From NCBI GenBank assembly GCA_907165135.1, contig OU015568.1:868001-932000 (forward strand): 64,000 nt of DNA, written 5' to 3'. Shown here one piece after another: positions 6,000 to 51,079 of the stretch (its first letter is position 1; each line of letters starts with the position of its first letter). Below the pieces are notes generated by a model that ran no database searches, had not been told where the DNA came from, and saw only the letters and a list, made by a program, of their open reading frames with translations. This DNA is from Oikopleura dioica (lineage: Eukaryota; Animalia; Chordata). The translations under genes were made by a program, and so were the position numbers.

Positions 6000-8900
6000 T
6001 CAGCGTCTGCGGCCTCCGACGGAAAACATTTGGTCGGCGTTTGGAGGAGCCTAGAATGAAATCGTAAGTCGAGAAAGTGGGTGCTTCTTAGGAAGAAATG
6101 CTTCTGGGAAAGCTATTTGCCGGCTTATTTCAAAGCTAAGAATATAAATTGCGACAACTCAAAGCAATTGCGACATTTCAAATGCGTTACCGTTTACATA
6201 AATGCGTGTTTATTCTGAAAATATGAAGATAATAAACTTATAAAAAAGCGAATCAATTATCATGGACAAAATTAACGCATCCCTTTGAAAAGGCATTGCC
6301 ATAAATTCAAAAGCCGGTTCTATAAAAAAACCATTCATCCTGTCAAATTGACCGACTTGTCAATCATCGAGTCTATTTTTACCTTCGGATGTTGGTACTT
6401 CTTTGCTCTTTCGTGGTTCCTATTTTCTGAAGGAATTTTATTCAGCCCGATCGCCTCTGCCGTGTCTTCCTCGATCGCCAAGTTCTCCGCGAGCGAAAGA
6501 GTCAAGTTCTTCATCTCTTCTTGTTTCTTTGTCCTTTCTCGTTCTGCTGCTTCAAGTCCTTGAGCAAGTCGTGAGTCTTGGTCGACATGGAGAGCTTTGA
6601 CGTCGGTTTTGTTGCCCTTTCTTGTGACCAAGGCGAAGACGACTTTTCCGTCTTCTTTTGTGTCAGGGTCGATGGCCTTTTTCGCATTCATTGGGACATT
6701 CAGATCGGTGGCTTTTGCGGAACCCATTCCCTCGTCTGCTTTCATCATGTTTTCGAATTCCTTCACGAAATCGTCGTCTTCTTGGCATTCCTCGTATTTG
6801 TTCCCCTAGAATGAAAAGTAAAGCTTTCTTTCATTCCAATAAATCGTACCTTAGGGACTGTTATTTCATTTTCCGCTTCGGTCTGCGTGTCTGTATCGGT
6901 CACAGACTCGGAGAGCTGCTCGTCTTGTGAGTCTTCATCTCCTTCTGCTATCATTCCTAAGCCAGCATTTCCTTGATCATCATTCTTAAAAACTATGTCA
7001 GACATCTTGATTTACGTCGACTCACTAACCTGGTATCCCATTTGCTCTAGTTTCTCCATCGCTTCGGTTTCAATCTTCTCAATAGCCGCGCCTACCTCAT
7101 CGAGTGTCTGAGGAATTTTTAGCTTGGGTCTCAGCGACTCGACGCAATCTTGAATGATGTGGTCCATTCCCAGGGGGAACGCTTGGTTGTGGATCGCGTA
7201 CAGCTCTTTCTTGATAAGCCAGTAGCGGAGCAAGTACTTTTTTGATGATCAAAAAACTGAAAACAGCAACCAAATGCGGGTCTTTTTTCTGATCATTTCC
7301 TGAAGATAAATGTCCAATTTCTTCTTTGCCGAGCCTTTGTCAAAGAAACAACCACATGTTTCCAGCATTACTGTAGCTAGCCGAAGTCTGATGAGATTTT
7401 CTGGAGGGTCAAGTGGCGATACCATCGTCAGTGGATCGGGTGCTACGCCAAGGGTAATGAAGGAGTAAAGGGTTGTGAAGATGACATTTGAATCAACCAT
7501 TTTGTAGTTGTACAGCTCGCCCAAGTATTTCACCTAAAACTCTTTAATAGAGCGATTCTTTTGGCAGAACTTTTTGTTAACCTGAATCAACCTTCTTTGG
7601 TTAAATCTTGGATCGGGAAACTCCATCGTAGCCTTGATATCTTCAAGTATATTGTCAACGACTTCGATCGCTTCCTCCTCGTGATAGCTCGACAATCCAG
7701 CGAGAACACTCGCAGCACAGTGAACGACTGAGAATTTAATATTGTATCCTTTCGATAAGACGCCAACGATAAATTCACGCATCTCAGGGTCTTTCCAGTT
7801 CATTTTTCGGAACTGCTTCAGAACGAAATCAACGTTTCTTTTGGACAAATGATCGTACAGTAGTCGGCAGCAGTATTCCTCGATTGCTGGTCGTTTTACG
7901 ACTTCTCTCGTGCCTTCTACAGGCGGATTGCAGCAGTAGATCGCGTTGTCTAACTGCGCAAGAAGCCGCTGATCCAAGTTCTTCGAATTTTTCTTCCTTT
8001 TCAACTGCTCAAGAAGCAGTTTCGTCTTCTGATGTGAATCTGGTGATCGGAAAAGATATCTGCCAGCTGATTCTAGCAAGCCGCAGATCATTTCTATCGC
8101 GACAATTGAGAAATCAATGACGAGAATTTTCAGACAAGTAGTGGCTTCTGAACGAGAAATGAGACCGAACTTGGTAGCTTCGCCGATGTAGCGGGCGTTT
8201 TTGATTTTAACATCGAAGTGAACCTGGTCTTTCTTTCGAAGATGGTATCGGAAGTCCTGAGAATGTTCAGGAATTAGTTAACTAGAGCTATCCAGTCGGA
8301 TCCGATCTTCGTTTCGGGCGACTTTGTTGAACCTAGGTCGGACAACCGCTGCTCAGATAGAAATAATTCTTTTGAACTAAGAACTTTCTAAAAACGCAAC
8401 TAATAAATTCCAGCATGCTGGATGCATGAGAATCCGCTTTGATAAGCTTATCATGACGAATTTAAAACGCAAATAAGATTCTCATGATAGCAAGAACAAT
8501 TATCTCTTGTCTGTGAGAAGTCGAAAACAACCAGTCTTTTTCTATATAAACCGAAATTCTTTCTTATTTCGACCATTTTCGAAGAGATACAAAAGTAAAA
8601 AGATTAGAGATCGAAAAAAGATTGGTGTCCTTGGAATTGAGAAAAAGAATTAATTCGAATTCAGGACTCACTCTTTTTCTGATCTTTTCTATCACAACCG
8701 ACGTTTTAATGGAACATTTCCTTGAGCAGATAAGAGGCCAAATCATCCGGTACTTTTGGCGCACATTCGCCCAGCGATGCGGCAAGTCGGGTGAAGAAAG
8801 GGAGCAGATCGACTCTTCGGCGATCTACTTTCCAGATTTCTCGTGGAAGGCGCTTTCGATTAGCGGGGGTGTTGAGGTTTAGGAGGAATTCTTGAGCCGC

Positions 8901-10593
8901 CGAATCGACCAGTTCTCGGTTGTAGATTGTCATCAGGGATTTCATGTAAGCGTCGAATTCTTCTTTTGCTTTTTGGGCTATTTTTACCAGGATCATTCTG
9001 GGCAATTTTTGGTCGAACCAAAATAGAATTTTCAAGAGAATTTCGATGGTAATTTATTTTTATTTGCGTTCAATTTGGACGATATTTTTCGAAAAATTCT
9101 AAGGTAGCTTTTGGGTCGATTCAAAAATTGATTTGAGACCCGAAAAAAGGGCATAAAAAGCCCGACCTGAAAGTTCCTTCGGATCAATTTCTTCCTTATC
9201 ATCCTCCAAATGATCGTCATCTCCAAAATCATCATCGCCGTACAGTTCCGACAGGCCTGCTGCAATTTCCTCTTGAATGTCCTGATCTGCCTTTCGCTTT
9301 CCTTTATCCTTGACGCCCGTTTTCTTCGGAATATGTTTCCCTCCTCTTTCTTTCTCGGAGTCTTTCCAGGCGTTCATTGGGACGAGGCTTTTCAGGTCCG
9401 GCAAAGAAGTGTAGAAAAGTCGTTGATCTTCATCTTCCCAGCAGTCGTCCATTTCGCAGTTTTCAATTCCCCGCTCTGGGTGATAAATATCGATGCTCAT
9501 TTCTTTGTCCTCCGGGGAGTCTTCCGGCATATGAACAATCTCCAAGTCTAAGAGCTCTCCAAACGACTTGGCAAAGTCCGTCAGTTCTCTGACTTTTGAT
9601 TGCTGATCGAGAAGGGCGGAGCGACGTTCTTCGTGAATTTCACCGCGCTGCTGGTAAATATGACGGTTCGTTTTCTCCATTTTCTTGAGCTTGTCAAATT
9701 GCGATTTGAGGCAGACATTGAGCTTCTCGAAGTAGTCAGTGAAGAGGGCGATGAAATGGTTCATCTTCTTTGGTTCGAAAACGGAAAGGACTGAAAATGA
9801 GAATAAAAGGGGGATTTCGACAGTTGCATTTGCAGAAAAAGAGCCGCGCTTTGCATAAAAGTATCAGAAAGAAAGAAAAGGGCTTACCTGGAAGATCTTG
9901 GTTTTGCTTTTTGCAAAGTTCCCTGATATTTGGCGGCACAATTCCGGCCACATCTTCTCCAATCGACTTCAACAGCGAAAGCACAACATTGATATGTTCA
10001 AACTTCTCCTTGTCCGACTCAATCAGCGCTTTGATCTCATGATGGAGGATTCCCAACCCTTGTTTGTCCATAAAAACGCCGAGGACAGTCAACTCGCAAA
10101 TAATCTTTAAATCGTTTTTGTGCTTTGCTGGTTCGTCGGCGATTTTGGACAGAGTAAACTTTTTCTTGAACGAAGAAAACAGCGCTTCCATAAAATCCTC
10201 GTATCGTTGGTGAATTTTCTGGCAAAGGCTGACGACAGCATCGATATCGGCTGTTTTGAACTTCGCATCTGCAATCGCCGCCGCTGCTTCGGCGATGTAT
10301 CGCCCGAAATTCAATCCAGCGAATTCCTTCTCAAGCGCTTCTTTTTGATTTTCTTTGATCGCCCCCAATTTCTTCACGAAAGCCGAGTTCTTTTTCACCG
10401 TCGAATCAAGCTTGCCTTTTGGCTTGTTTTTGTCGAAATTGGGATCAGCATTTTCTTCACGAGCAGCTTTTCTGGCATTCAGCCGGTCGGAAATATCAGT
10501 GAGAAGATTTTCTAGCAGCTTTTCTTCGTCAATTTTGTCTTTTGGCGCCTCTTCGCTGTCTTGGACCTCGGGAGAAGGATCATTTTCGGTCAT
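6000..10593 (-). CDS. UPF2: Regulator of nonsense transcripts 2 (MIF4G x3)
   Basis: Conserved motifs KLDSTVKKNSAFVKKL, NTPANRKRL, DFRYHLRKKDQ, KYLGELYNYKMVDS and C-terminal APPNADQMFSVGGRRR*. It includes two GA-AG introns. Confidence 0.97.
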
Positions 10594-10971
10594 CAATCTC
10601 AAATTTACCTTTATTGATCTACTAAGAATCTACTAGCCGCTAGCGGCTTCGTGAACAAAAGAAAGAAGCCGCGGGAAATCAAAATTCTGATTGAAAGGAT
10701 TACTTTTGCGAAGCGGCAAGCTGCAGAAAATCTTGATTTGCATCCCTTTTTTTGAAGAAAGAAAAAAAATGAGTTTCAAAGAAAGGTGATTTATTAATTT
10801 AAAAAAAATCTGGTTTTATCTTTGATGTGTTCGAATGTGTGAGAAGATAAAGGCAGTATAAAAGGTGATGCGAGTGAGGAAAATGTGCAAGTTTGAAATT
10901 ATTGTTTGGTCTCTTCTGGATTTCTAGCCAGCCATATGGTGAGCTTGTGTTTGTAAAGAAGCTTCTTATAC

Positions 10972-12274
10972 TCAAGCTCCTTGGGATCCTCGTTGTTGTT
11001 GAGGATCTCTTTGAATTCCTCGACGACGCCAGTTATGGAGGTCTGAAACGATTTGATGACTAAAAGAAATGGAGAAATAAGGACTTACAATGTTGGAAAA
11101 GTCGTGGAAACGATCCCAATCTTGGTTCTTCAGCTCTTCTTTTGGAATTGAAAGAATCCACTTCCACTTTTGCTCCGCGCTCATCACCCTTATTTTTTGT
11201 TGGAATAGTGATTCAAATCGAAATGATATTGAAACTTACGTGAAATCAAGGGGAATTTCATCGTGAGAATCGAGGCTTGTATTGTTGACGGTCTTGTGCG
11301 GGTCTTCATTCGAAATTGTGCTTTCATTCTGAGCCGGATGAAAGGCAGCTTTGATATTGGTCTTCGACAGTGTCGATTGAGCTACTGGAAGATTTCCCGG
11401 CGGCTTTTCTGTCGATTCAGTTGGACCGATGATTCCCTAAAAATCAGCATGAGTATTTTTTAACGAAAGACAAAAGACCTCGTCTTGCAAGTTTTGAATA
11501 TCTAGTTTCGAAATCTTGACCCTCAAGTTGTTCTCCAAACACTGTTTCTTCAAGTCCTTCTCCTTCTTTTTCTTCTTCGCCAGTTCGATCGAATCAACTG
11601 ATTGCTCGAGCAAGCTCATGATTTTTTCCGCTCGACCGTTTCCAATTGATCGTCGTGATTTTGCACCTTGGGGAGACAGCTTCGAGGTGTTTTCAACGGA
11701 TCCTGTTGTTTTGTTGAAAGCTCGGCTGCTTCCGGTGAATTTGATGACTGGAGAAGAGGCGACTTCTTCAGAGTCGGGATCGAAGGGATCATTGCTTGAT
11801 TTCGGTCCAGTCTCGCCTTTGAAGAGATCTTTTGCCAGACTTCGTCGAGAAGATCGATTCTTTCGCAGCGGCGTTTCGCCTAGGTCTCGAATCGGAGAGT
11901 CTTTCTTCTTGCTCTTTGGACTGTCTCTTTTCGCCGGAGAAAGATGAGACGCTCGTTCGAAGGTCAGTCGGTGGCCCTTCTTGCTTCGTGGCGTTTTTTC
12001 GTCGACGGGAGTTTTCTTCAGTTTCTTTGGCGTTTTGGGACTGCCGAGGTTTTGGGGAGAAGTTTTTTCTGGAATCTCCTCTGGCTTCTGAAAAAAATTT
12101 AGATAGACAAATGATATTTGATGGACGCAAAAACCATTTCTATTAATTTACCTTGTTCGCATCTTTAAGAATATTTCGCGTGAGCTTTGAGCTCTTCAGA
12201 CTTAGCCCATGTTTCCCAAGAACAGCATTAGTTTTCTTGTATCTCTCCACGATCGTGTTATCCCCGTCTTCCAT
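10972..12274 (-). CDS. Unknown Lys/Ser-rich, largely disordered protein (multi-exon)
   Basis: Long open exons on the minus strand (MEDGDNTIVERYKK.., KTPKKLKKTP.., SAEQKWKWILSIPKEEL) separated by short GT-AG introns. Confidence 0.55.
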
Positions 12275-14788: not shown

Positions 14789-14903
14789 GCTTTAAAATAT
14801 ATGCTATAATATATAGCATTTAATAAATACAAGCATTTTATTAAAGCAAATATATACAGTCAGATTATTCAAACGGGTCTTAAAGCGATTGCTTATAAAT
14901 TTA

Positions 14904-15699: not shown

Positions 15700-18830
<3,131 letters not shown>

Positions 18831-20237
18831 CAGCAGATTCTTCGCTTTCTCTTTTCGTCAGGAATTTGATTCTTCAAGATCTCTGCAGTTTTCGTCTGGT
18901 TTTGTTGATGTTAGGACTGGATCGATGCGCCGGGATTATGTAATTGGACTTATTGGACTTGTGGAGCGACTGTGTGATTTGGTGACATAGAAAGTTACTT
19001 TCTGAACAAATAATAACTGTAATTATGTAACATTATGATATTTTAATTAATGATCACGCAGAGGAAGCACCGGTTCAAATTGCAAGGGATTTTTATGTTC
19101 TCATTTTGTACAGATAAAATTATTTCTTCTTTATGATTTCCAAGCTCATTTCTCTTTCTTATTCCAACCGGAAAAAATCGCAATTCAAAGTCGAAAAGAC
19201 ATAAAAAAATCGAGTCCAACCGGGGTCAAAAATCAGCAACTGGCTTGTTTACTCTTTGCTCCTTTCGAAAGAATCCTCATTCGATTTCAAAAAAAATCGA
19301 ACGAAATTTTCGGCAAGTAGACTCTGTCAATACTACCCGCCGTGGTATTTACACAATGAGGTGTGTTTCTTCGTAAAAAATCATATCGGAAGGAGAGCTA
19401 GGAAGAACGAGCTTAGTTTCTCTTTTTTCGAGGACACGTGTCTTGAAAACGGTGGTGAAAGATGGGATCAATATCGAGTTTGAAGAATTGCGCGGGATGA
19501 ACTTATTTTCATTGGCGCAGGCGGTTTCAAGCTCGTACGATAATTTTAATAAGAAATGTTGAATCAGCAACTTTGTCATCCTTGATCGAAAAATTAATTC
19601 TTAACCAAAACAAGGCGAATATATTTAATGTTACATTTACCTTGATATTAAATTCGATTATTTATGATCACGAATTTTTATTTTAAAAATCTGAAGGCCT
19701 CTTCCAAGGGCAAGGATAAGCTTATCACTTTAGCTCAGAGTGTGATTTAGACATAGGTGTGAGCAGACTTCAAGCAGACACAATCATAGAGAAAATTTTG
19801 CTTAGATTTTGTTTGAACAAGAGAATGTCTCAAAAACGAGAATTCATAACTCAACCAAGAAGAGCAGGCTACAAAATTCCCGATTTGAAAGGAAATGGAA
19901 AAATCAAGTAACAACAAGAATAAGTTCTTTCGCTAATTTGATGATTGTTATCCATACTCAGGGCTTATTTCTAAGATTTATAATGTGAATTATATAATTT
20001 ATCTTTATGACATATAATATGCAAAAATATAAATGGCTGGAGCGCTTATCGTAAGCCTTGGGACTGATAACATCCCAGATGCAATTGCGTCATCGAGAAT
20101 TCAATTGTCTGGGAGCTTTAGGTCACCATCGAAATCAATCTGAAAAAGAAGAAGAAGCTAGTCATGACCGAAAAAAGTAAGGATAATAGTACTTCAAATC
20201 CAAAATAAAAATTCCGTGAAGTACTGATTCAAAAAAA

Positions 20238-21408
20238 ATGGAGAAAAAACCGCTTGAAGAACTTTTCTTCCCTGATATTACTCCCTTGAAAAGAAGCATA
20301 ATTTCAAATGCGAGAAAAGCTACTTCTTCAGTCATAAGAAAATGCGATGATTTTGCCATTTCCGGAAGAAGAAATTTCACTCCGAAAAACATTCTGGTTC
20401 TTGCTTTTCTGGCGATGCTTCCTCTTTCGATCCCACATTTGCGAAACCTGAAAATGAAGATTGGCAGAATAGCTTCTTCACCTCCCGCCCTCTCAATTCC
20501 CGACTTTCCCGACTTTCCGAAAATCTCCTTTCCAGAGCTTCCAGCGGTCAACTTTCACTCTAAAACGAGCCGCCACGAAGTCAAGAAGTGCGGAGAATCA
20601 GAAGACATCATAAACCTGCGTAAAGAACTAATAGAGCTTCGAGAAGAGCTTGATGATCTCCGAAAAAATCCTCTCAACGCGGAAAAAGTCAAGGAGGAAC
20701 TTCAAGAAATTGTTTATTCAACTCTTGAAGACAAGGTTTGCCCCGACAAAAGTTTTTTTTTCAACTCGTATTTTTAAGACGGGCATGGCTGATTACGCGC
20801 TAGAATCAGCAGGTGCAGAAGTTCTCGAAAAATGGACGACTCCGGGAATCCCGACTGGAAACGCTTTGATGAAGATTTGGAACATGCCGATTTTCTACCA
20901 GACAATGTCTCCTAGACTTGCTCTTCAACCGAATGTGCATCCGGGGAATTGCTTCGCGTTTGCGGGAGATACAGGCTTTCTGACGGTCAAGCTCGCTCGG
21001 CCGATTTACCCAACCAATTTTACCATCGAGCACATTCCAAAGGTACTTTCTTCGTGAAATTTTTACGCCTTACTATTTCAGGCACTGTCATTTGGCGACA
21101 TAAGCTCTGCTCCGAGAAACCTGACTCTGGAAGTATTCAACCCTATTTCCGGAAAAGGCAGCATCGTCGGCACCTCAACATTCAACATCGACGGTTTTCC
21201 CGTTCAGACCTTCAGGACTTCCATTACTGATGCTCTTTCTAAACCAACTCAGGTCAAAGGTCTTTCCTTTTGAAAAGCATTGTCAACCTGGACACAAAGG
21301 AAGACCTTATTTAAGTTCATACGACTAAGAATCAATTCAAACTGGGGAAATCCCAATTTTACTTGTCTCTACCGACTCCGTGTTCATGGATCTCAACATG
21401 ATTTTTAA
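20238..21408 (+). CDS. SUN-domain nuclear envelope protein
   Basis: TM and coiled coil followed by a SUN domain: [51 protein letters not shown]. Confidence 0.92.
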
Positions 21409-22016
21409 CCTATTTTAGTTAAATTTAACCCATTCAAATCAGATAACAAATATTCAGCTTTCTTATGCATATTTTCATGATACGAAAAGCGAGATTTGCC
21501 AATCTTTCTGAATGAAAAAAAAATAAAAATTGATATTTCGGCGTCTTGAAGAAATACTTTCTTCAAGAAAATATCATTCTGATATTGTCAAATTTTCCTC
21601 CTGACATCTGAAGATGTCAAAAACGTCACCTTCATATTGAACTAATCTTCTAATAATCTTTCTTTTTATTTTACTAACTCCACTAACAACATTTCTCAAA
21701 GTGTTTCAAAGCTGCCGAAAATGTCAAATGAATGAAGTCAATAAAATTCCTATCGTTAAAAATCGGCGTCAATTTGGCTATTTTTATCTTAGCGTTGAAC
21801 AATTGCGCGCTATCTCTTGAGCTCTTCGATTAGTTTTATCTTTTCAAATCTGGAGGACTTCTGTCATAACAAAATTTAAACTCCGCCGCTATCGCCTTTA
21901 AACCGAGAAAAAGAGAAGGCTTCGCAAAGGAACTTTGCCCGCGGCACCTATCGCTTAGCTGGTACGACCTCTCAGCAGAAGCCACATTCTAGGGCCGATA
22001 TTATGAAAAAGCAAGG

Positions 22017-23355: not shown

Positions 23356-23459
23356 AATTTCTTCAATTGAAAATAGAAAAAATGGATGAAATTAATAAAT
23401 AATAAATAAATATCGTATATTTTCGAGAAAAAACGGAATATACAGTCAGGCTGACTGAG

Positions 23460-25224: not shown

Positions 25225-28089
25225 TCAGCCACTTATTGTTGTGTTGGCCCAATCAGGATAGACGCCAAGGTTGTAAGTTGGATAAGCTATAAAATGGAAT
25301 TTTCGGGAATCAAGGAAGAGAACGCTTACCTATGATAGGTAGGAAAATCGCCGAGATTGTGACACAAATGATGTTCATCAAGAATCCGGCCCGGACCATG
25401 TCAAACGATCGCAAGGCACCGTAACTGAAGGCGATTGCATTTGGCGGCGTCGCGATAGGCAAAAGGAAGGCGAAGGAACATGCCATGGTGGCTGGAATGC
25501 AGAGCACGAGGGGATTGAGGTGGATCGCTTGCGCCAGACTCATCAAAATCGGAAGAAAAACCGAGGCGGTTGATGTATTTGAAGTAAAACCGGTGACGAA
25601 GGAGATCAACAGTGCGATGGAAAAGGGAAGGATCGAAAACGGCCATTCAGAAACTAACTCTTTTATTCCTTCCCCGAGAATCTGTGACAATCCTGAGCGC
25701 TGGCAAGCATCAGCAAGGGCAAAGCCGGCTCCAAGGAGGATGATGACGTCCCAAGCAAGAGTTCGTTGAACTTCTTTCCATTTTAAAATTGGCTCTGCAG
25801 CTTTTGGCATTCCTTCTTCATCTTTTTCACAGGGCTTTCCGAGGAGCCAGCGGAAGAAATTCGGCTGTGAAGGGAAGATAAAAAGACTGAAAAACCAGTA
25901 GATAGAAGGAGAAAGTAGGGAAGGCATACCTGAAACAGGTCAAAAGAGCTGGAGTAGAGTCCCTTACGTATCCACCATCAAAACCCGCTTCCCATCCAGG
26001 CATAAACTTGGGACTTCTCGTAAACCAAAGCACAGCCAGAGCGACAAAATGAATCAATACAACGATTTCGGTGTACTTCATCTTTCCAAGATTCTCATAT
26101 CGATCGTGAATGTCCTTTACGACTTGTTCATCCTGCGATGTCACTTCGCGCCGTTTGATGTCATTCCACACTTTTTTGATTCCAACGAAGAGGGTCAAAA
26201 GCCAAATCCAGCAGAAAATATTGCAAATGATCGAAACGGGAAGAGCGTAGACCATCCAAGTGAGAAAATTGATTTCTTCTCCAGCGGAAGGGTGGTTGAA
26301 GACGGTGGAGATTTGGGTTTGGAGGATGAGATTGACGGGTGTGCCGATGAGTGTGCCGATTCCGCCGATGTTGGCGGAGTAGGCGACTGCGAGAAGCATG
26401 GCTTTCATGAGCTAGAATTTGAATTTTAGATTCTGTCTTTTTGCGATTGATAAAATGAGGTAAAAAATTGAATTGGTGATTTTTGGTAACCGTCATTGAA
26501 AACGAAAAAAAAACTCTAATTTTTCCCGAACGCATTTGGTTTATGGTTTCTTACCAGATCTGGAGATTCCTTCGATTTTCTTTTCTTCTGTTTTCTCGTT
26601 CGTGAGACTCGTTTTTCCACCAAAAGATTCTGGTTCGAAGTATCCAACGTCATGGCAGACTCGTTTTGAATCTAAATAACAGTTACTTACAGTCAAAAAA
26701 TGAAAAATTCACTGCAAAGCGAAGCAAAAATGTACAGTTGCCACCGTAAGTCACCAATGAAATCACCAGCCACTGTAATTGACTGTAAACTTACGATTTG
26801 GTCGACTCTACTTGACGGCCTCTTGTCTTCGTTTTTGATTACCTGGTAAGAGTCAGTTAGGGGTGTCTGGGCGTCACTGAAGCCATCCACGTCCTAAAAC
26901 GCAGCTTGTTAGTTGAGTTAATAGCTTCACAAACTAATTACGAAAAAAATCTCTCTAGTTGATTTGATTAAGAGAAACGCACGAAAAGAACATCTCACAC
27001 GTCAGTTTTCATTTCAACGCACATTTCCGTTTTCGAATCCAGCCACCGGGTCGACAACGATTCGGGGCACTTGGGTTCCAGATTGACGATTATTCTAAAA
27101 GGAAGAAATACAGCTCATAAACAGGCATCAATCAAACCTTTTGTCGCTCTTGCGATTGCTGAACAGATGTCATCGAAGTCATGGGAGAAGCTAATGCTGA
27201 TGGATTCCGCGAGTATCGCATTTTCTTTTGAATCATGGATCAGCTACTAGTTTAAATTTAAGCTTCAAACCTGGATAAAACCGCCAAATTTAGAAAGATG
27301 GATCGACAAGGTCGACTTTTGTGGCCCAGTTTCGTAGGCAGCGGGGTCGAGAGTTACATTAAAGCCTATTCAAGCTCTAGAATTAAGAGATGAACTCCCA
27401 TCGTAAAAACCATTTTCGGAGTCCCGTGAGAAAAGACTCTTTTCTAGAACAATCCTTGATCCGCCTCAATCTCCGAGCTTTCTTCTTTCACTTCCGAGGA
27501 ATCTTCTTTGTCCCCAACGATTGTTTTGACTGTAGCGACGGCGATGGGCAACATCATTGCGGTTGTGGCGGTGTTTGAAATCCACATGCTCAAGAAAGCC
27601 GTGACAAACATGATTGATCCCATAATTGTGTGAAGTTTTGCGCCAGCGACTTTCAATAAGGTTGAAAAAAAGTCGCTCGAATACGGAAAACTTACAGAGC
27701 CCGTTTATCAGTAAAGGAAAAAGCGTGTGTCGTATGTCACACGTGACTTAGCTTAGCAGTTGATTACCCAGTCTTAGATAACGAGCGCTTAAATCACCCT
27801 TTCCCTTTCATTACACGCAGGGCGATTCGCAAGTGCAAATTGCACTTTTCAATTGCAATCGCGACGATCAAGCCTCCAAAGAACAGAAAGTTCGTGTCTA
27901 AAAATGGCTAAGACGCGCTGGAGGGTTAATTTTCTCACCCTTGAAATAATGGACCGCAACTTCTTTTGCTGGCAAAAGTCCGAAGAGAGGAAATAGAAAC
28001 ATAGGCATCAAGGAAGTTACGGCCAAAGGAGTGACTTCGAATGTCCAGTAGATTGACATGAGAATCAGGCAGAAGAGACATTTGTATGG
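25225..28089 (-). CDS. SLC13A: SLC13 family Na+/sulfate or dicarboxylate cotransporter (first exon not located)
   Basis: Motifs [58 protein letters not shown] and C-terminal YPDWA. Confidence 0.93.
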
Positions 28090-31108: not shown

Positions 31109-31144
<36 letters not shown>

Positions 31145-34538: not shown

Positions 34539-36622
34539 TCACGGTTTCTCAGGCATACATTTTACATGGCTTCGGAAATACCATAACTCAGCTAGCCAGT
34601 TTGTGTATTCTTTCGGCGATCCATATTTGCCTCCCGTTCGGCCAAATCTATATTCGTTCCATTCTTCTTTCGGGGTGCAGTTATTCACATGAGTGATCAT
34701 CGGTTTCTTGCACCAGGCGATTCGCAATTGACCTCTTGCGTCGAAAAAGTATTCTTTGTGGCCTTTGTTGTCGAATTCAGGGTCTAAGGGGTCAAAATAT
34801 GAGACAAAGCGGAACTTGAATGTTTACCAAAGCGAATTTTTCCAGCTGTTACAGTTCGACCAAGAAAGAAATTATCCATGATGTCGACAATTCTACATTC
34901 ATCCTCGAAGCCTTCCTAAGCTCAAAAACATACTCTCCAGAAAAAAATATTTGAAGTATAAAATCGAAAAGATTTTTCGTCAAAGTCTGTATTTTGAGCA
35001 TTTCCTGGTAGTTCAAGATGCTGATAGATCCCCCTGTGAAAGCAAAAGCCGGTCGGGGAGGGTCTGATATTCATGAAATCACTCTTCGCCCAGGGACTCC
35101 GTTCATGTTTGTTGAGCGATCCGCCGATAAGATCATAGCCTGTTGTTTCTGCTACGTTAACCATGTAGCGCAAGTCGGTCTGATTCGTGAATTGAAAATC
35201 GTCATCGCACCAGAGGAAGAATTGAGTCCTTAAAAATGGCTCTATTTTTCAAAAATCATAAAAATAAATAAAAAAAAACAAACTTTGATTTTTCAATTGA
35301 AAAATTTTTGGATATTGAACAAGAACAATCATAAGTTCATGACCCATGAATCATGGGCCATGATCCATGGGAATTTATCTATAGCTTATTTTAACACTAG
35401 AATTTACCTCACCTGACTTAGCGCAAGAGCCCTCCCAGCAAACCAGCCTTCCTTCTCCGGCATTCTGTATTGCTTGATCTTTATAATCTCACTCTCCATC
35501 TTCCGAAAGTCCTCATCATTGTTGTCGTCCGCGATGATGACAGTTATATTCGGGTAAAAAAGTTCGACGCTTTTCAAAAATCTTCGAAGGCAAGGGTAGC
35601 GAAGATAGGTTTTGGTCAGGACAGTTACTCGATCTTCGACGGCATCAGAGGTTCGATGATTGAGAACGGGTAGTTTGCTCCAATGAATTGTAATGGGAAA
35701 TTCGATGGTGAAGTTTAAATCGCCCTCTACGGTAAATTTGACGATGTCAACTAGTTTTCTTTGTTGATTTCAAAGATGCGATTCTCGAAAATTTTGATCA
35801 ATAGCATAAAAACTCATGGAAACCAATTCCTAGCGTCGTATTTTGTCGGATGATACCATGCTCCAGCAAGACCAGCATTCATCTCTTCCACCGTCAAGTT
35901 TCTTACATCCAAATTTCTTGGCAATTTCGACAACTTGACTTCTCCAAATTTTGCCTCAAACTTTCCCGAGATTCGTATTTCTGGGTCATTTTGGGAGATT
36001 ATTTTAATCTCCAATTTTGCCGACTCATTTGGTTCGACTTGATATCCACTGGAAACATATTCGACTGGAATTTTGGGTTTGCAAGTTGTTGGAGGAGGTT
36101 TGTTTAGTTCGTAGTAAAAGTCTCTTTGAAGGTTCATTCTATTTTCTGGTCAAAAATCGGTATTCTTAATGTAAAAATGGAACCTTAACTTTTCCAAAAC
36201 TTAATATCTGTCTCATGCTTGCTCTTGAATTCGTCTCTTGTCATAGCTATTAAATCAAACTTTCCACCAAAATTGCAGTCGCAGCTTCTGTTATCATAAA
36301 GATTCTCGTAATCGCTCGGCAATTCCCGATCCCAAGCTGTCAAACTCCCGATTCCAACCGATTTATATTCAAGTTTTCGATATATTTCTTCATATTGGAC
36401 GATTTCTCTTTTCGGCGAAGATTGAATTGTTTCTCCCAAAGTAGGGCTTCCAGCTGAAATTGCGGGAACAACATCATTTGGATATTCAATATCTCTTGAA
36501 ACAGAAATTGTTCCGTAAAAATATCCAAGCGCAAGAGTTATCAACGGCAAAAATTCTCTGAAGGTCCAGCCCTGAATCGATCTTTTTATTATCGATATGT
36601 TTTCTTGCGCATTGTTGGGCAT
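34539..36622 (-). CDS. B4GALNT: Beta-1,4-N-acetylgalactosaminyltransferase (B4GALNT1/2-like, GT12)
   Basis: Motifs VTVLTKTYLRY, VIIADD, GWFAGRALALSQV, DNFFLGRT and GQLRIAWC. Confidence 0.9.
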
Positions 36623-45669: not shown

Positions 45670-46005
45670 CTACTGCAAGTTATCAAGTTCATCCCACTTC
45701 AAGACTTCAACCTCTGTTTCAGCAAGGTTCAGTTTTCAAACAAAGTATATATAATAAATCAAAAATCACACATATCAAGATATATTGTCAGGAATATACT
45801 TCACTGTTGCCTTAATTCTGTTTGTAACATTAATGAAGATGATTTGACGCATATGATATGCGGCATATTCTATACAGTCAGGTCTTGCAATTGCGAGAAC
45901 TGCAATTGCGCGGTTTTTGGCGATAATCTCGAAATTTAATGCATTTTCGTAAAGTGCTTCTTTTGATAGTAAAATGCCAAATGAGAACAATAATTGAATA
46001 TGCAA
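45670..46005 (-). CDS. 3' part of an unknown small protein
   Basis: ORF ..AYHMRQIIFINVTNRIKATVKYIP followed by a last exon ..ETEVEVLKWDELDNLQ*. Confidence 0.3.
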
Positions 46006-46223
46006 ACAATTTTTTACTTTTCTAGAGACAAAAAAATAAAAATAACGTAAGATTTCAGCATACGTTTATATATTACGCAGAAAAGAGGCGAAAAGGTCAA
46101 TAAGATTGTCCCATTTTCAAAAAAATTGACGGCTTGCAATTACGTGGTTTTAGGCGAAAATCCCGAAAAATAAAAACGCGCAATTGCAGGACCTGACTGT
46201 ATATAAGCCGCATATAAAATGAA

Positions 46224-48502
46224 TCAGACAATGCAGAATGAACTACTTGGTATAGAAAAAAGAGCAGGTCGAGCGAAATCATCAAGATGAGTATGAACTA
46301 TCTCGGTGGCTGTAACGGTTTCTCCATTCCAGTTGATATTTTGAACTACTTTTCCCATTTCTCCACTGAAAACGTAAAATCGATCAACCAAATTAAGCGC
46401 AGAAGCAATATTCTGGTGCTGAACCGATGTCATTATCTAATTTATATGCGGTATCCTTACTGTCGAGACTTGTCCAACATTTCTCCACTGATCATCTTTT
46501 AGGAAGAAAACATTAAAGTTCCCCCCATCCCCGGTGTTCGTCCAGCCAGAGATAACAATCACTCCTTCATCAACATCAAAACAAACATGAGATTTGATAT
46601 TCAGGCTCACAGAGTCTTGCCACCCATTTTCTTTTAAGATTTCGACAGAATCGGTACTGAGTCCGGCAACAACGAGAGGACACTCGCCATAATTTGCCAG
46701 ACACGTATATCTTTAAGATAAAGAGCAATAAGATCGAGTTTCTATTGTTACCGATGGCTATAGTTTGTTGAGAAGGTTTCTTCTGCTTTCACGCCGTCGA
46801 AAAATTGACAAGATGTATGACCACTACTACCGAAGCAAAGCAGAACTGAACGTTTTGTGGATTTTATTTTCTGTTGAAATAAAAAAAATGATTTGGATGA
46901 CCCTCTTAAATCGGGTTTTTGTAAGGTCATCTATCGGATTTTTGTAGGGTATTTTTGTCGGGTTTCTCTTTGGATCAACTCATCAGTTTCTTTATAGACA
47001 GCCCCCAAAGTTCTGTACCCGACGAAAACCCGACAAAAACCCGATCCGAAAATTCCGACTTCAAGAAGACCCGAGGAAAATCCGATCGGGGGCATTTGAA
47101 ATCCCCGGATTTCGGGGGCATTTGTTGATCATAGTATGTTGGCTTATTAGTGTTCCTAGAAATTTAATACATCATGAAAACTTGTTCGGAGCAATCTTTG
47201 ACCAATAAAAATATATAATTTTAGCATATTTTCGACTTTTTGTCATTTTTCATCGAAAACTTAAATTGTCAAGCGCGACTTTGAGGGTGTTAGAGTCGAG
47301 GTAGACCCCCAAAACTTTAAGCCTCAAAATCGTTTTTGACCTGTAGATTCTACTTTATACATAAACTTTATACATAAGTATATATTGATAAAGGTTGACA
47401 ATTAAAAATAATAAAGATTGTTAATCAAAGATAAACCTTTGTTTATTTTGTCCATCGTGAGTGTCGCCCCTTCGTACAGATTAAAATCTTGAACCAATTG
47501 AATTTGTTGCTCGACAAAACTACAACCAACAAGTTTTGCAACCTTTAAATAATATTTGAAAAAAATTTATACGATACCGAGTCCTACTTTTCGTGGAGCG
47601 CCTGAACCTCCAAAAATATAATGTTCCCCATTCAAAGTTCCAAAACCAACGCGTTCAAGATATCCTTGCGCTGGAGTGTTGATGACAACATTTTCTACAA
47701 TCGTTTCTTCTGCTGTAAAAATATAGGAAAGTCTGTTGCTTCCTTTGTCGGACAAGACGAGAACTGGAAGACTATTTCCAAGAGAGTTACCACACTATAG
47801 TATTAACTCTGTTAGAAAATTTTTTTCGCTAAAGAGTGAAAGTTTTCTTGCCAAAGCTTACTCAGCTCGGTAATTTTGCAATTCTGATCTCACCGAGTAT
47901 GATGGACAAGGACATCCATTAGAGCAATTTGACATGCATGGACAATTTTCTTTCGCCACGAGAAATTCTTCAAAGCATTTTGAGTAGCAATCATTATCAG
48001 TTGGGCTGCACATAAGTTGACATTTCACCTATTTTGTCACTGAATTTTCCACTCGTAGCAAAAATGAACCTGATCATCGATAGCTTCCTTAATGCATTTC
48101 AATGTATCTGCATCTTCTTCTGGATTCCTGCAAACACAATAGGGACTTTCACATCCTTCGCATCCATCCAAACAGTTCAGATTGCAGGGACAATCTTCCG
48201 CACAATCTAACCGATCGCTTTCGATAATAAATTCTTAATAACCTACAGACAAAATTTTCCAAGCAAAGAGTCTCACAAACATGATCAGCACAGGCATTTC
48301 GACAATCCAAATAGCTCATTCTGCAAGTAGCCTCGCATTCCTCGCCAACATCCTGATCTGGGCATGTTCTCTGGTTGAAACCGATCGCTTGTTCTTTTTC
48401 TGTGTTTCAGATTTTTTCTCCTAAAAGCTTGAAAGGCTAAAAATTTCGAAACTTTCCAGGTATGAACCCCTCAGCGACGAGAAATAAAAGCGGAAGTATC
48501 AT
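46224..48502 (-). CDS. Secreted Cys-rich + kelch-like beta-propeller protein, copy 2 (inverted paralogue of 36975-38525)
   Basis: Exons closely similar to copy 1 (VENVVINTPAQGYLERVGFGTLNGEHYIFGG; LKDDQWRNVGQ; PALFSIPSSSFCIV*), with extra N-terminal Cys-rich repeats. Confidence 0.8.
46908..47086. mobile_element. Foldback-type element made of TCGGGTTTTT / AAAACCCGA subrepeats, in an intron
   Basis: About three TCGG(G/A)TTTT units on the left and about five AAAA(C/T)CCGA units on the right, in inverted orientation. Confidence 0.6.
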
Positions 48503-48704
48503 TCTCGGTCTGATCTAACCGAAATGAAAAGCTTTCAAGTTCTTGATTCTCTTGAAAACACGTGTTTTCTTCTCACAGTTTTTTTCGTAATGAAGCCGGT
48601 TCTCCTAAAATTTGATGACACTTGCACAATTCTCAGCAAAAAGGTAAAAGAATCTATTGAAATTAAAAATTTGTTGAATTCTATTTGAAGAAATGAATAA
48701 ATAA

Positions 48705-51079
48705 TCAGTGAGCAGGAACTTCGACAAGATTTTTCTTTATCTTCTCAATGTATTCTGGATATTTGGCATCTTGTTTGCAGCCGCGGTGAACGTCAAAACG
48801 CCAGAATCGCATTACGCTCTGGTACCATCTGTTGATCTTTGCCGCTCTCTTCGCTCTGATCAGTCGACAGATTCGGCAGTAATCGTATTCATCACGTGCT
48901 AGGGAGAATTTCAATGAAGAAAAAAAGCTCGAGAAAGCTTACAAAGAGTGAAATGAGATTCATGAAGAGGTTTGATTCTTTCTGGCCGAAGGGATCGCCA
49001 GTCATGGTATTCCATGTAAGCATTGTCGTTTTTGTCCAAATAATCGAGGTAGAAAACTGAATTTTTGTTATGAAAATCTGAGATTTTTGATGAAAAAGAA
49101 GATTTTGACAAAAATTGCGACAGAAAACTCAAGTTTTTTGACAATTTTTTCTCTGAAATCTGATTGGCCTATTGGCTGAATGCGGGTATCTGATTGGTTA
49201 AAAATTTGAACAAAATTTTAGGTCAAAAATGTCGCAATTTTTCTACTTTCGTGGTTTTAATGAGAAGCTAAGAGGTTCATTTCTCATTATGAGAAAACCT
49301 CTTTTTGGAAAAAATCATGTAAAAAACCGGCAGGTAAGTAGGATTACTCAACCGCAGGGAAAGGACTAATCCATTGAGCTACTCGCTTAGGGACCTAAGT
49401 CTGCGGCTTCCTCGAATTGCTCCGCGTGGATGAAAGAATTCGGGGGCGCGATTTGCTTCACATCATCGTAGTGCGGTCCAAACACGACTTTTCCCAGGTT
49501 GTTCGAAATTCGCTTTATTCAATCAAAAATCATGGTACCGCTTAATTAATCTGAACCTTTTTCCTGGAACAGCGAGAGCGCCGAGAGCATTTCGCCAGAA
49601 TTTCTCAGAGATGTAGTCTGTACAATGGTAGGCATTTTCGAAGGAGAGGTAGAATTTCATGTGCTGAATTACTGTATCTTCGCTGTCAGAGTTGTATTTT
49701 AGGGACTTGGCCATGTTGCCGAAGGATCGTTTTGTTTGATTCTCGAAGCAGGCGCCTTCTCCATGAAGTTTCAGTCCTGCTTCTTTCAAAAAGGGTCGAC
49801 AAGAAAAGGTCGAATAAATCAAAATCTGATTGGCTAACCGGCTGAATTCGGACATCTTATTGGTCAAAGATCCAACCAAAATTCTGCCCAAAAATTGACT
49901 TATCAATTGTCTTGTCGACCCTTTACTATCAGTTTCTGCCCGTAGGTCCATCTCAACCTTGCCCCGGGCGTGTGATCACAGTTTGAAATCAACCAACCAG
50001 TGTGAAAGTCTTTCAGCCCCTCTTTTTCATGGTTCTTTAGCTTCAATATTTTCTCCATCATCTGCTCATTGCTCAAAAGTTCCTTCCCACTAACTTCATC
50101 AAAATACATCCTCATCGTTTTCTGAATGCTTCCATAGCCCCTGACAATATCCGAATCCCGCTTGTACGAATATGTAATGTTGAAAGAAGAGTCGAATTCC
50201 TGAGTGAAAGATTGAAGATTTTGCTGCGAGTCGATATTTTTTATTCCACTTTCATAATTGACGAAAACCCAGTATTGCGAGCTGTTTCGGGTCTCTTTTT
50301 TCGATACTCAACTCTCAAGTGCTTTTCGCGCAATTTCGCTATTTCGGGAATTTTTTAAAGTTTTTAGTTTTGTATCGTTTCCTAAAGAAGGCGGCTTGAG
50401 TTGTTCATCTTGAGAGCGGCCTCTTTTTGCCGGGTCCTTTTTTCGTAAGCGCTCGTCTTCTGCCTTTTGAAAGGAGAGAAGTGGTCCGTTGTTGATTATT
50501 ACCGCATCGGCTTATTATAATGTGATAAATGAAATAAGAGCAAATCTTACCAGTTTCGTACATATCCCTATCATTCGTAATAAAACACTCTCCACAAAGC
50601 TCACGCCCATAATTTTGAAACGGCTTGCTTGGAATCCTCGTCAGCTGGTTCGGGATCAGTCGATTTTCATACCAACCAAGAATCACTACTTTTTCTTCGC
50701 GATTTCCTTGAGGGCGCATTTTCGTTCCCCAAATTTTCCCCATCCACTTTTTTCGTTCGCTTGGGGAGAGACGTTGGATGAGTTTTTCGTGCATTTGTTC
50801 TCCGGTCATTGTTTTTTGTGAAAGATGAAGTTTATAGGGTTTTTCTTGTTTCTCATTTTTCTCTTGCCTAAGATCTTCCTCAGCATTTCGATCTTCTTCT
50901 CTGATTTCATCGATCTTTTCGAGCTCTTTTTCGTAAATTCTTTTTTCTTCGAAAACTTCTCTCTTTTTGTTGATAAGTTCTTTCCACGACGAAATATCTT
51001 TCTGTGCGAAAAATGAAACTGGAATCAGCAAGGATAATAAAAAGAAATATTTGAGTTTTGTAAACTCTCTTCTTATCAT
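48705..51079 (-). CDS. FUT: Alpha-1,3/4-fucosyltransferase (GT10)
   Basis: Type II TM, QYWVFVNYES, FNITYSYKRDSDI, WLISNC, KFYLSFENAYHCTDYISEKFWRNAL, VPVVFG, YLDKNDNAYMEYHDWR and CRIC. Confidence 0.92.

What the first reader, a model, noticed from the sequence alone, without database searches (positions are those of the whole stretch)
7237..50381. A class of non-canonical introns closed by a terminal stem in a fixed register
Joining conserved protein motifs requires or strongly favours non-GT donors at 11 junctions. Each of these introns, plus one weak-GT intron, pairs its 5' and 3' ends (shown as lead-STEM / STEM-tail). 7237-7299 GAA-ATGATCA / TGATCAT-CAAAAAAG; 8257-8720 GA-AATGTTC / GAACATT-CTCAG; 16638-16698 G-CAAGGGTC / GACCCTTG-AAAAG; 17417-17508 GAAA-GAGTC / GACTC-ATGAAAG; 18152-18213 GAA-TGGG / CCCA-AAACCAG; 21253-21315 GTCA-AAGGTCTT / AAGACCTT-ATTTAAG; 27366-27454 GATT-GTTCTAGAA / TTCTAGAGC-TTGAATAG; 27650-27804 GGA-AAGGGTGA / TCAACCTT-ATTGAAAG; 34912-35004 GAAAT-GCTCAAAA / TTTTGAGC-TTAGGAAG; 35759-35829 GAA-TTGGTTTC / GAAATCAA-CAAAG; 49488-49563 GAAAA-AGGTT / AACCT-GGGAAAAG; 50295-50381 GAAA-CGATAC / GTATCG-AAAAAAG. 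The stem sequences are all different, but tail length minus lead length is always 2-5 nt, and acceptors are mostly A-rich with no pyrimidine tract. The GTAAG/GTGAG introns I inspected in ACSL have T-rich acceptors and no such stem. GA/GG/GC-AG introns are known in Oikopleura. The inference is that RNA structure substitutes for weak U1/U2AF signals and positions the splice sites. I am not aware of this geometry being described for these introns.
Basis: partly seen in the sequence, partly recalled or inferred. Interest (0 to 1): 0.9.

Follow-up and report, generated by a model that had tools for sequence, protein, structure and literature searches.

The report
Hairpin-closed non-GT introns in a larvacean
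In this larvacean (Oikopleura-type) stretch, introns that start with GA, GC or GG instead of GT have ends that pair into a short stem at a set distance from both cut sites, which ordinary introns lack and which may explain how they are spliced.

Summary
Observation confirmed. All 12 quoted stems are in the sequence.

- **Enrichment in the window:** 11 of 12 non-GT introns carry a helix of at least 4 bp in the stated register, against 6 of 30 GT-AG introns (Fisher p = 3e-5). Swapping ends between introns destroys the signal (permutation p <= 5e-5). Complementarity peaks at tail minus lead = 3-4 only in the non-GT class.
- **Class features:** these introns have A-rich acceptors with no pyrimidine tract, and often a GT inside the 5' arm.
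- **Junctions:** no RNA junction evidence was obtained; the listed runs come from another lineage. Eight junctions are supported by homology: intron-less orthologues in marine metagenome contigs (UPF2, ACSL), gap-free alignment to vertebrate SLC13 and a full-length ACSL, and Pfam profile continuity (GT10 fucosyltransferase). The SUN-gene junction fits only roughly, and four are unvalidated.
- **Replication:** three non-GT introns in a relative's UPF2 show the same geometry.
- **Conservation:** both SLC13 introns are orthologous in 6-9 lineages and keep a terminal helix. Formal covariation is not significant, with one compensatory pair.
- **Origin:** there is no general target-site duplication and no repeat family within the window.
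- **Interpretation:** partly supported. A cis helix that brings the weak splice sites together is the best reading, but it is unproven.
- **Precedent:** this scan reported the same pattern in at least 8 other windows of this genome. I found no paper describing it for Oikopleura. Close analogues exist in Fritillaria, euglenids, diplonemids and Amoebophrya.

The parts
7237..7299 (-). GA-AG intron, 63 nt, in UPF2. Stem ATGATCAGAAAA/TTTTTTGATCAT (12 bp, one G.U), lead 3, tail 8.
   Evidence: Sequence. Helix. The helix is in the MFE fold, z = -2.8. Junction validated: relatives L003 and L004 have a continuous ORF here and align gap-free to the spliced model. The GT-AG alternative would insert unrelated residues.
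8257..8720 (-). GA-AG intron, 464 nt, in UPF2. Stem AATGTTC/GAACATT (7 bp), lead 2, tail 5. Near-duplicated flank CTCA(A)GGA.
   Evidence: Relatives read LLKDFKYHL without interruption at this site. They carry their own GC-AG intron 17 nt downstream.
16638..16698 (-). GC-AG intron, 61 nt, in ACSL. Stem CAAGGGTC/GACCCTTG (8 bp), lead 1, tail 5.
   Evidence: In the MFE fold, z = -3.1. The junction rebuilds the GYGLTE motif. The HSPs of full-length ACSL P0175 abut at residue 464. The GT alternative at +6 would insert two residues.
17417..17508 (-). GA-AG intron, 92 nt, in ACSL. Stem GAGTC/GACTC (5 bp), lead 4, tail 7.
   Evidence: In the MFE fold. Junction validated by the continuous 250-aa ORF P0140 on L022: [18 protein letters not shown] against the spliced [18 protein letters not shown].
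18152..18213 (-). GA-AG intron, 62 nt, in ACSL. Weak stem TGGG/CCCA (4 bp), lead 3, tail 7.
   Evidence: The MFE fold closes with this helix. Junction validated by continuous ORFs in L019, L021 and L022.
21253..21315 (+). Weak GT-AG intron (GTCAAA), 63 nt, in the SUN-domain gene. Stem AAGGTCTTTC/GGAAGACCTT (10 bp, one G.U), lead 4, tail 7. A-rich acceptor.
   Evidence: In the MFE fold, z = -2.1. Pfam Sad1_UNC profile positions of the two exons abut to within 1-2 residues.
27366..27454 (-). GA-AG intron, 89 nt, in SLC13. Stem GTTCTAGAA/TTCTAGAGC (9 bp, one G.U), lead 4, tail 8.
   Evidence: No GT-AG alternative within 45 nt. An orthologous GA-AG intron is present complete in 7 further lineages, and its 5' end is also seen on the truncated L012 contig. 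A terminal helix is kept, and pair 22-90 is A-U in the window and C-G in five others.
27650..27804 (-). GG-AG intron, 155 nt, in SLC13. Stem AAGGGTGA/TCAACCTT (8 positions with one mismatch), lead 3, tail 8. The interior holds a conserved TCACGTG block.
   Evidence: The junction is gap-free against vertebrate SLC13A2. The orthologous intron in 5 other lineages begins GG in L012 and GA in the other four. Its 5' arm is invariant and its 3' arm varies, including a G.U version in L017.
34912..35004 (-). GA-AG intron, 93 nt, in a GT2-family glycosyltransferase gene. Stem GCTCAAAA/TTTTGAGC (8 bp), lead 5, tail 8.
   Evidence: In the MFE fold. No GT-AG alternative within 45 nt. The junction is not independently validated.
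35759..35829 (-). GA-AG intron, 71 nt, in the same glycosyltransferase gene. Stem TTGGTTTC/GAAATCAA (8 bp, one G.U), lead 3, tail 5.
   Evidence: In the MFE fold. The GT alternatives would delete 14-22 residues. The junction is not independently validated.
49488..49563 (-). GA-AG intron, 76 nt, in the GT10 fucosyltransferase gene. Weak stem AGGTT/AACCT (5 bp), lead 5, tail 8.
   Evidence: The helix is not in the MFE fold. Junction validated by Pfam Glyco_transf_10 continuity: the upstream exon ends at profile position 87 and the downstream exon resumes at 90 after the split codon and one residue.
50295..50381 (-). GA-AG intron, 87 nt, in the fucosyltransferase gene. Stem CGATAC/GTATCG (6 bp), lead 4, tail 7.
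   Evidence: In the MFE fold, z = -2.05. No GT-AG alternative within 45 nt. The upstream small exon carries the ADAV motif. The junction is not independently validated.
58147..58197 (-). Apparent GA-AG intron, 51 nt, without an in-register stem.
   Evidence: Best helix 3.5, and none in the MFE fold. Junction unvalidated.
25865..25967 (-). GT-AG intron (GTAAGG), 103 nt, in SLC13, with an in-register 6-bp helix AAGGGA/TCCCTT (lead 2, tail 5) and a normal pyrimidine-rich acceptor. It shows that the stem is not strictly limited to non-GT donors.
   Evidence: The intron is absent from the long continuous ORFs of L008, L009 and L011.

Best explanation
These are real introns of the known Oikopleura G[A/C/G]-AG class. 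They form a distinct structural subclass with five shared features:
- the upstream exon ends in AG;
- the intron starts G-A-A-A-like;
- the acceptor is purine-rich with no pyrimidine tract;
- the two ends are closed by a short helix (4-12 bp) whose sequence is specific to each intron;
- the helix begins 1-5 nt inside the 5' splice site and ends 5-8 nt before the 3' splice site.

The most likely working (inferred, not shown) is as follows. The helix forms in the nascent transcript and ties the weak donor to the weak acceptor. This does in cis what U1, U2AF and the cross-intron bridging proteins do for ordinary introns. It would also act as a ruler that places the AG next to the 5' G for spliceosomal catalysis. 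The helix would have to be opened later so that the branch site can be used.

The invariant +1 G and terminal AG argue that the spliceosome, not another enzyme, does the cutting.

How the helices arise is open. Many of these introns are lineage-specific, so insertion of short palindrome-ended DNA is plausible. Only two of the twelve carry anything like a target-site duplication.
For: **Pattern and class specificity.** See: 11/12 against 6/30 in register; offset peak at 3-4; duplex energy -10.2 against -4.7 kcal/mol; A-rich acceptors. The helix is in the MFE fold of 9 of 11 short introns.

**Junctions supported by homology for 8 introns.**
- 7237 and 8257.
- 17417 and 18152.
- 16638.
- 27650.
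- 49488.
- 27366: orthologous junction conserved across lineages.
- 21253: approximate only.

**Independent replication.** The UPF2 gene of a relative (L004) has three non-GT introns, GA, GC and GA, at positions the window lacks. Each has a terminal helix at offset 2-5. Its GT intron has none.

**Persistence.** Both SLC13 introns are orthologous in 6-9 lineages with exon third-position identity of about 0.5.
- A terminal helix can be drawn in all of them.
- 77.6% of cells are paired, against 38-50% for slid registers.
- There is one compensatory pair and several G-C to G.U changes.
- Keeping strong duplexes in both the window and L008 despite 18 differences in the arms has p = 0.005-0.02 under a neutral simulation.

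**Other points.** The ends of the neighbouring GT intron show no such duplex in the relatives. The invariant G...AG fits what is known of 5'ss G and 3'ss G pairing in the spliceosome core (my own knowledge). The leading laboratory still calls recognition of non-GT sites unclear.
Against: - No RNA evidence was obtained for junctions, structure or splicing dependence.
- Covariation is not significant, with only about 3 effectively independent lineages.
- In L013 and L018 the downstream helix (-5.2 and -6.9 kcal/mol) is no better than neutral expectation. The upstream helix is not distinguishable from neutral.
- The 5' arm of the upstream intron is invariant, so sequence rather than pairing may be what is conserved.
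- One GA intron lacks the stem and two stems are only 4-5 bp.
- A helix that covers the likely branch region would have to be unwound.
- A few GT introns also pair at their ends.
- My GT control set was partly chosen by consensus appearance.
Confidence: 0.55

Rival explanations
1. The stems are relics of terminal inverted repeats left by the DNA elements that created these introns (MITE or introner-like insertions, as proposed for Fritillaria borealis). The permissive larvacean spliceosome removes the introns regardless, and the helix has no present function.
For: - Non-canonical introns of F. borealis carry TIRs and TSDs.
- Most non-GT introns compared are lineage-specific: 7237, 8257, 17417 and 18152 are absent from relatives, and L004a-c are absent from the window.
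- The two longest introns have near-duplicated flanks, CTCA(A)GGA and TGAAAG.
- A window/L012-lineage-specific GT intron (25865-25967) also has the helix.
- Covariation is not significant.
Against: - There is no direct repeat beyond AG in 10 of 12 introns.
- No second copy of any of these introns exists in the 64 kb window or the fetched loci.
- Introns of 61-93 nt are very short for transposons.
- The SLC13 introns are old, being shared by all lineages, yet still closed, with wobble and compensatory changes.
- The narrow asymmetric register (tail longer than lead by 2-5 nt) is not what a TIR plus TSD predicts unless the cut is always at the same TSD position.
Confidence: 0.22
2. The helix exists to hide a canonical-looking GT that lies 4-9 nt inside the intron, or to manage U1 binding there. 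Cutting then happens at the upstream G rather than at the cryptic donor, which would shift the frame or insert residues.
For: - A GT starts at +4..+9 in 8 of 12 non-GT introns, against 4/22 GT introns and a background of 0.24 (p = 0.002-0.008).
- It often sits in AAG|GT or AGG|GT context.
- All three L004 introns and both SLC13 introns have it.
- Chimeric ends show a small complementarity bump at the same offsets, which means the arms share an AGG(G)T / ACC(C)T flavour.
Against: - Four stems contain no GT: 7237, 18152, 34912 and 50295.
- The idea does not explain the fixed distance to the acceptor or the purine-rich tails.
- It is a post hoc observation on a small sample.
Confidence: 0.1
3. 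These introns are removed by a non-spliceosomal, structure-guided pathway like the one suspected for euglenid nonconventional introns.
For: The geometry is close to that of euglenids, where +4..+6 pairs with -8..-6. U1 and U2AF signals are weak.
Against: The +1 G and terminal AG are invariant and the exon ends in AG, as in spliceosomal introns. Published work attributes larvacean non-canonical splicing to the U2 spliceosome.
Confidence: 0.05
4. The pattern is an artefact of how the first reader chose junctions and stems.
For: Junctions were inferred without RNA data, and five are not firmly validated. Leads and tails were read off by eye.
Against: An unbiased helix search finds the same helices. 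Eight junctions are supported by homology. Swapped-end and GT controls fail. The pattern replicates in another lineage and, per this scan's own notes, in at least 8 other windows.
Confidence: 0.03

Closest known systems
Oikopleura dioica G*-AG non-canonical introns (Denoeud et al. 2010; about 11-12% of introns, see PMC8008620; GA-AG excess in PMC7072748)
   Same: Same donor types (GA, GC, GG with AG acceptor), same kind of genome (tiny introns), and exon-terminal AG.
   Different: The papers I could read explain them by a permissive spliceosome, a U1 variant, or m6A on U1. None mentions a terminal helix, the purine-rich acceptor as a class trait, or a fixed register. Denoeud 2010 and Henriet 2019 were not readable here.
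Fritillaria borealis non-canonical introns (Henriet et al. 2019, as summarised in PMC11282704)
   Same: Sister larvacean. Abundant non-GT introns at species-specific positions, with terminal inverted repeats, removed by the U2 spliceosome.
   Different: Their termini are AG/AC and AG/AT with a YAY or TAC target-site duplication, and they derive from MITE families. Here the termini are G[ACG]-AG, there is no general TSD, each stem is unique, and no repeat family was detectable.
Euglenid nonconventional introns
   Same: A helix brings the intron ends together with nearly the same geometry: +4..+6 pairs with -8..-6, that is lead 3 and tail 5. Three introns here have a tail of exactly 5.
   Different: Euglenid borders are variable and lack G...AG. 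The removal mechanism is unknown, they are excised as circles, and the organisms are protists.
Noncanonical introns of hemistasiid diplonemids and Amoebophrya introner elements
   Same: Non-GT-AG introns whose 5' and 3' ends base-pair and bring the exon ends close.
   Different: Pairing there involves the terminal nucleotides themselves or 8-20-nt repeats with 3-5-nt direct repeats and recognisable families. The organisms are protists. No fixed asymmetric register is reported.

Membership tests
U2-type spliceosomal intron, Oikopleura G*-AG class | Intron begins with G followed by A, C or G, and ends with AG. | tested here: met
11 of the 12 claimed introns are GA (9), GC (1) or GG (1) with an AG acceptor.
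U2-type spliceosomal intron, Oikopleura G*-AG class | Removal restores an open, homologous reading frame at exactly these junctions. | tested here: met
   Eight junctions are supported by intron-less orthologues, vertebrate or full-length homologues, Pfam continuity or conserved orthologous junctions. 21253 is approximate only. Four rest on frame only.
U2-type spliceosomal intron, Oikopleura G*-AG class | Spliced junction seen in RNA, with lariat formation. | tested here: inconclusive
   In read laying on 16000-21999, only 13 reads at 90-95% likeness were laid and no joints were found. The runs are from another lineage.
Transposon-derived intron (MITE or introner) | Terminal inverted repeats. 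| tested here: met
Transposon-derived intron (MITE or introner) | Target-site duplication flanking the repeats. | tested here: not met
   Only AG is shared in 10 of 12 introns. 27650 has TGAAAG, and 8257 has CTCA(A)GGA with an indel.
Transposon-derived intron (MITE or introner) | Many similar copies in the genome. | tested here: inconclusive
   No second copy exists in the 64 kb window or the fetched loci. The whole genome was not searchable with these tools.
Euglenid-type nonconventional intron | Variable, non-G...AG borders. | tested here: not met
   G at +1 and a terminal AG are invariant.
Euglenid-type nonconventional intron | A helix near +4..+6 / -8..-6 joining the ends. | tested here: met
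   Lead 1-5, tail 5-8.
Euglenid-type nonconventional intron | Spliceosome-independent removal, with circular excision products. | not testable with these tools
   This needs RNase R or circular RNA sequencing.

The most novel reading that the evidence does not exclude
About a tenth of the introns of a chordate would be defined by shape rather than by the usual GT and pyrimidine-tract signals. A short intron-specific helix at a fixed asymmetric distance from both cut sites would act as the recognition element and ruler for the major spliceosome. That would be a structure-based splicing code, convergent with euglenid and diplonemid nonconventional introns, and a route by which newly inserted palindrome-ended DNA becomes a harmless intron.
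Probability: 0.4. Interest if true: 0.85.

Novelty: new variant of a known kind. Interest (0 to 1): 0.72.

Why it matters
How Oikopleura's single, conserved-looking spliceosome handles about 11% non-GT introns is an open question. A 2026 paper from the main laboratory in the field still calls recognition of such sites unclear.

A cis helix in a fixed register is a concrete hypothesis that can be tested at once. Break the stem and then restore it in minigenes injected into embryos, or shift the register and see whether the cut sites move.

It would also have three wider consequences:
- It would link animal introns to the puzzling hairpin-closed introns of euglenids, diplonemids and dinoflagellate parasites.
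- It would bear on how new introns are born.
- It would improve gene prediction in larvacean genomes, where junctions at non-GT sites are hard to call.

Tried and rejected
- **RNA-seq.** The only raw-read RNA runs carry the species label but belong to another lineage. Thirteen reads were laid at 90-95% likeness and no joints were found.
- **Home-made exon-chaining gene finder.** It preferred long spurious GT introns. I used it only to pick obvious short GT-AG introns as controls, and later added 8 introns placed by homology.
- **Sulfotransferase synteny route to other lineages.** Only short contigs were returned.
- **Metagenome scan with an ACSL exon.** Only 33-34% identical hits came back, which were useless.
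- **Target-site duplication test.** Negative apart from two introns.
- **BLAST of the introns against the window and all loci.** No repeat family was found.
- **Rfam on the window and on the SLC13 intron.** Only two tRNAs elsewhere.
- **Formal covariation on alignment A1.** Not significant. Alignment A2 was too poorly aligned at the 3' arm to use.
- **Contiguous-helix neutral simulation.** The metric was too strict for helices with mismatches, so I replaced it with duplex energy.
- **Branch-point motif inside the 3' arms.** Inspected by eye; no consistent YTRAY.
- **Nested or stepwise splicing through the internal GT.** It does not give the validated mRNA.
- **Papers.** Denoeud 2010 and Henriet 2019 could not be opened.

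Full report
**What is there.** The window is a compact, gene-dense larvacean sequence. Earlier notes of this scan call the genome Oikopleura dioica, Okinawa type. Pfam places the claimed introns in the following genes:
- UPF2 (6.3-10.6 kb, minus strand)
- a long-chain acyl-CoA synthetase, ACSL (15.8-18.6 kb, minus)
- a SUN-domain gene (20.2-21.4 kb, plus)
- an SLC13 transporter (25.3-28.1 kb, minus)
- a GT2-family glycosyltransferase (34.6-36.8 kb, minus)
- a GT10 fucosyltransferase (49.4-51.1 kb, minus)

Eleven introns are on the minus strand.

**Is it more than chance?** I searched each intron for its best contiguous helix between the first 18 and last 22 nt, at any lead 0-8 and any tail 0-12.
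- Mean score is 6.77 for the 13 listed introns, including the declared exception. It is 4.05 for 22 confident GT-AG introns (p = 2.6e-4) and 4.07 when 5' and 3' ends of different listed introns are combined (permutation p <= 5e-5).

I then added 8 GT-AG introns placed purely by homology in ACSL and SLC13. With these, 12 non-GT introns compare with 30 GT introns as follows:
- In-register helix of at least 4 bp: 11/12 against 6/30 (p = 2.9e-5).
- In-register helix of at least 5 bp: 9/12 against 3/30 (p = 8e-5).
- Terminal duplex energy: -10.2 against -4.7 kcal/mol (p = 5e-5).

The best helix lies at offset 2-5 in 10/12 non-GT introns, against 6/30 GT introns.

ViennaRNA puts the terminal helix in the minimum-energy fold of 9 of the 11 short introns folded. 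Among 14 GT introns only 25865-25967 closes in the same register. The acceptor difference is also real: the A fraction at -14..-3 is 0.43 against 0.22, and A rather than pyrimidine is usual at -3.

**Are the junctions right?** RNA evidence could not be had. The raw-read RNA runs listed for this species label gave 13 reads at 90-95% likeness and no joints, so they belong to another lineage. I therefore used comparative evidence. Exon queries retrieved marine metagenome contigs (TARA, ENA, JGI) from related larvaceans.

| Intron | Gene | Support |
|---|---|---|
| 7237-7299 | UPF2 | Relatives have an uninterrupted ORF that aligns gap-free to the spliced window model |
| 8257-8720 | UPF2 | Same as above |
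| 18152-18213 | ACSL | Continuous ORFs on L019, L021 and L022 |
| 17417-17508 | ACSL | Continuous 250-aa ORF on L022 |
| 16638-16698 | ACSL | Rebuilds GYGLTE; a full-length ACSL aligns across it without a missing residue |
| 27650-27804 | SLC13 | Gap-free against vertebrate SLC13A2 |
| 27366-27454 | SLC13 | Orthologous junction conserved across lineages |
| 49488-49563 | Fucosyltransferase | Pfam profile positions 87 and 90 flank the split codon |
| 21253-21315 | SUN | Fits the Sad1_UNC profile to within 1-2 residues |
| 34912, 35759, 50295, 58147 | various | Reading frame only |

For 27366, 34912 and 50295 no frame-preserving GT-AG alternative exists within 45 nt. Elsewhere the GT alternatives insert or delete residues in conserved stretches. 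'Requires or strongly favours non-GT donors' is therefore fair.

**Replication outside the window.** The relatives' UPF2 (L004) has three non-GT introns at positions where the window has none, plus one ordinary GT intron without a stem.
- GA-AG at 2503-2599: GGGGT/ACCCT including one G.U, offset 2.
- GC-AG at 3388-3520: a two-part imperfect inverted repeat.
- GA-AG at 4007-4137: TGAAAATT/AATTTTCA, lead 6, tail 9.

Intron positions differ strongly between the window lineage and these relatives in UPF2 and ACSL. Many of these introns are therefore young, or were lost in the other lineage.

**Do old introns keep the helix?** The two SLC13 introns are orthologous in the window and in 5-8 further lineages (the upstream intron complete in 6 lineages in all, the downstream intron complete in 8 and cut short in L012). 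Exon third-position identity between the window and the distant lineages is about 0.5, and the intron interiors are largely unalignable.

- *Downstream intron.* Every lineage has a terminal helix of varying strength, from -5.2 to -15.8 kcal/mol, and it is in the MFE fold in six of the eight lineages folded.
- On the MAFFT alignment, 77.6% of cells of a 14-pair helix are paired, against 38-50% for slid registers.
- One pair changes on both sides: A-U in the window, C-G in five lineages, and C.U in L013. One pair alternates G-C with G.U.
- The covariation measures do not exceed shuffles.
- A neutral-substitution simulation gives p = 0.005-0.02 for keeping the strong duplexes of the window and L008. 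The weak duplexes of L013 and L018 are what drift would give.
- *Upstream intron.* The 5' arm AAGGGTGA is invariant. The 3' arm varies: TCAACCTT, TCAACCCTT, TCACCCT, TCACCCG, TCATCCT with a G.U, and TGACCCT. A helix of 5-8 pairs remains in all six lineages, but this is not statistically separable from neutral.
- The neighbouring GT intron has no comparable duplex in the relatives.

I read this as suggestive evidence, not proof, that pairing is maintained.

**Origin.**
- A transposon origin as in Fritillaria predicts target-site duplications and families. Only 27650 (TGAAAG) and 8257 (CTCA(A)GGA) have anything beyond the shared AG.
- No intron has a second copy in the window or in the fetched loci.
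- The chimeric-end control shows a small bump at the same offsets. Several 5' arms share AGG(G)T, and a GT starts at +4..+9 in 8 of 12 non-GT introns, against 4/22 GT introns and a background of 0.24.
- The arms are therefore not fully arbitrary. A cryptic canonical-looking donor is often buried in the stem. This could mean a common requirement, such as U1 docking or masking, or a common origin.

**Mechanism.**
- *Shown:* the class, its geometry, its persistence in two old introns, and its recurrence in another lineage.
- *Inferred:* the helix forms co-transcriptionally and brings the weak donor and the tract-less acceptor together. It would substitute for cross-intron bridging and place the AG near the +1 G. 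It must later be opened, because in the shortest introns the likely branch region lies in or next to the 3' arm.
- *Rivals:* the invariant G...AG and the published assignment of larvacean non-canonical splicing to the U2 spliceosome argue against a euglenid-like non-spliceosomal route. A purely relic TIR remains possible, at about 0.2.

**Comparison with the literature.**
- The G*-AG class is known: 11-12% of introns and a GA-AG excess.
- The explanations offered are a permissive spliceosome, a U1 variant, RNA editing or template switching, and m6A on U1.
- Six full-text searches found no description of terminal helices in Oikopleura introns. Two key papers, Denoeud 2010 and Henriet 2019, were not readable, so prior mention cannot be excluded.
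- Close analogues are the F. borealis TIR/TSD introns, euglenid nonconventional introns (+4..+6 with -8..-6), hemistasiid diplonemid introns and Amoebophrya introners.
- I therefore class this as a new variant of a known kind.

**Relation to earlier notes of this scan.** The same pattern was reported in at least 8 other windows of this genome. I used those notes only as a lead to look at related lineages. My own comparative result is weaker than some of those notes state.

Noticed in passing
window 27650-27804 (minus), interior about 27722-27735: The SLC13 GG-AG intron has a conserved interior block in all six lineages: an invariant TCACGTG (E-box-like CACGTG within AGTCACGTGTGAC), plus GCTCGTTA..GTAATCA upstream. 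The rest of the intron is unalignable. There was no Rfam match.
   Followed up: partly
5' arms of the non-GT introns, for example 49488-49563, 27650-27804, 16638-16698 and 17417-17508: A GT starts at intron position +4..+9 in 8 of 12 non-GT introns, against 4/22 GT introns and a background of 0.24. It is often in AAG|GT or AGG|GT context, so a canonical-looking donor is buried in the stem.
   Followed up: partly
window 25865-25967 (minus): A GT-AG intron with a normal pyrimidine-rich acceptor carries a 6-bp helix AAGGGA/TCCCTT in the same register (lead 2, tail 5). It is absent from the relatives L008, L009 and L011.
   Followed up: partly
window 26672-26794 (minus): A GT-AG intron has an 11-bp inverted repeat TTTACAGTCAA/TTGACTGTAAG in a different register (lead 5, tail about 14). 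The 3' arm holds a second GTAAGT.
   Followed up: no
UPF2 (window 6.3-10.6 kb against L001-L007) and ACSL (window 15.8-18.6 kb against L019, L021, L022): Intron positions turn over strongly between the window lineage and the metagenome relatives. In the stretches that could be compared, every window intron, GT and non-GT alike, is missing in the relatives, and the relatives have their own. One of these is a GC-AG intron only 17 nt from the window's 8257-8720 site.
   Followed up: partly
window 1966-2039 (minus) and 60524-60595 (plus): Two tRNA genes, with Rfam scores of 64.9 and 61.6 bits.
   Followed up: no
L022 1-1390: The ACSL relative on this TARA contig is markedly more GC-rich. It has one 250-codon exon where the window has five exons, so it is probably a different larvacean species.
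   Followed up: no
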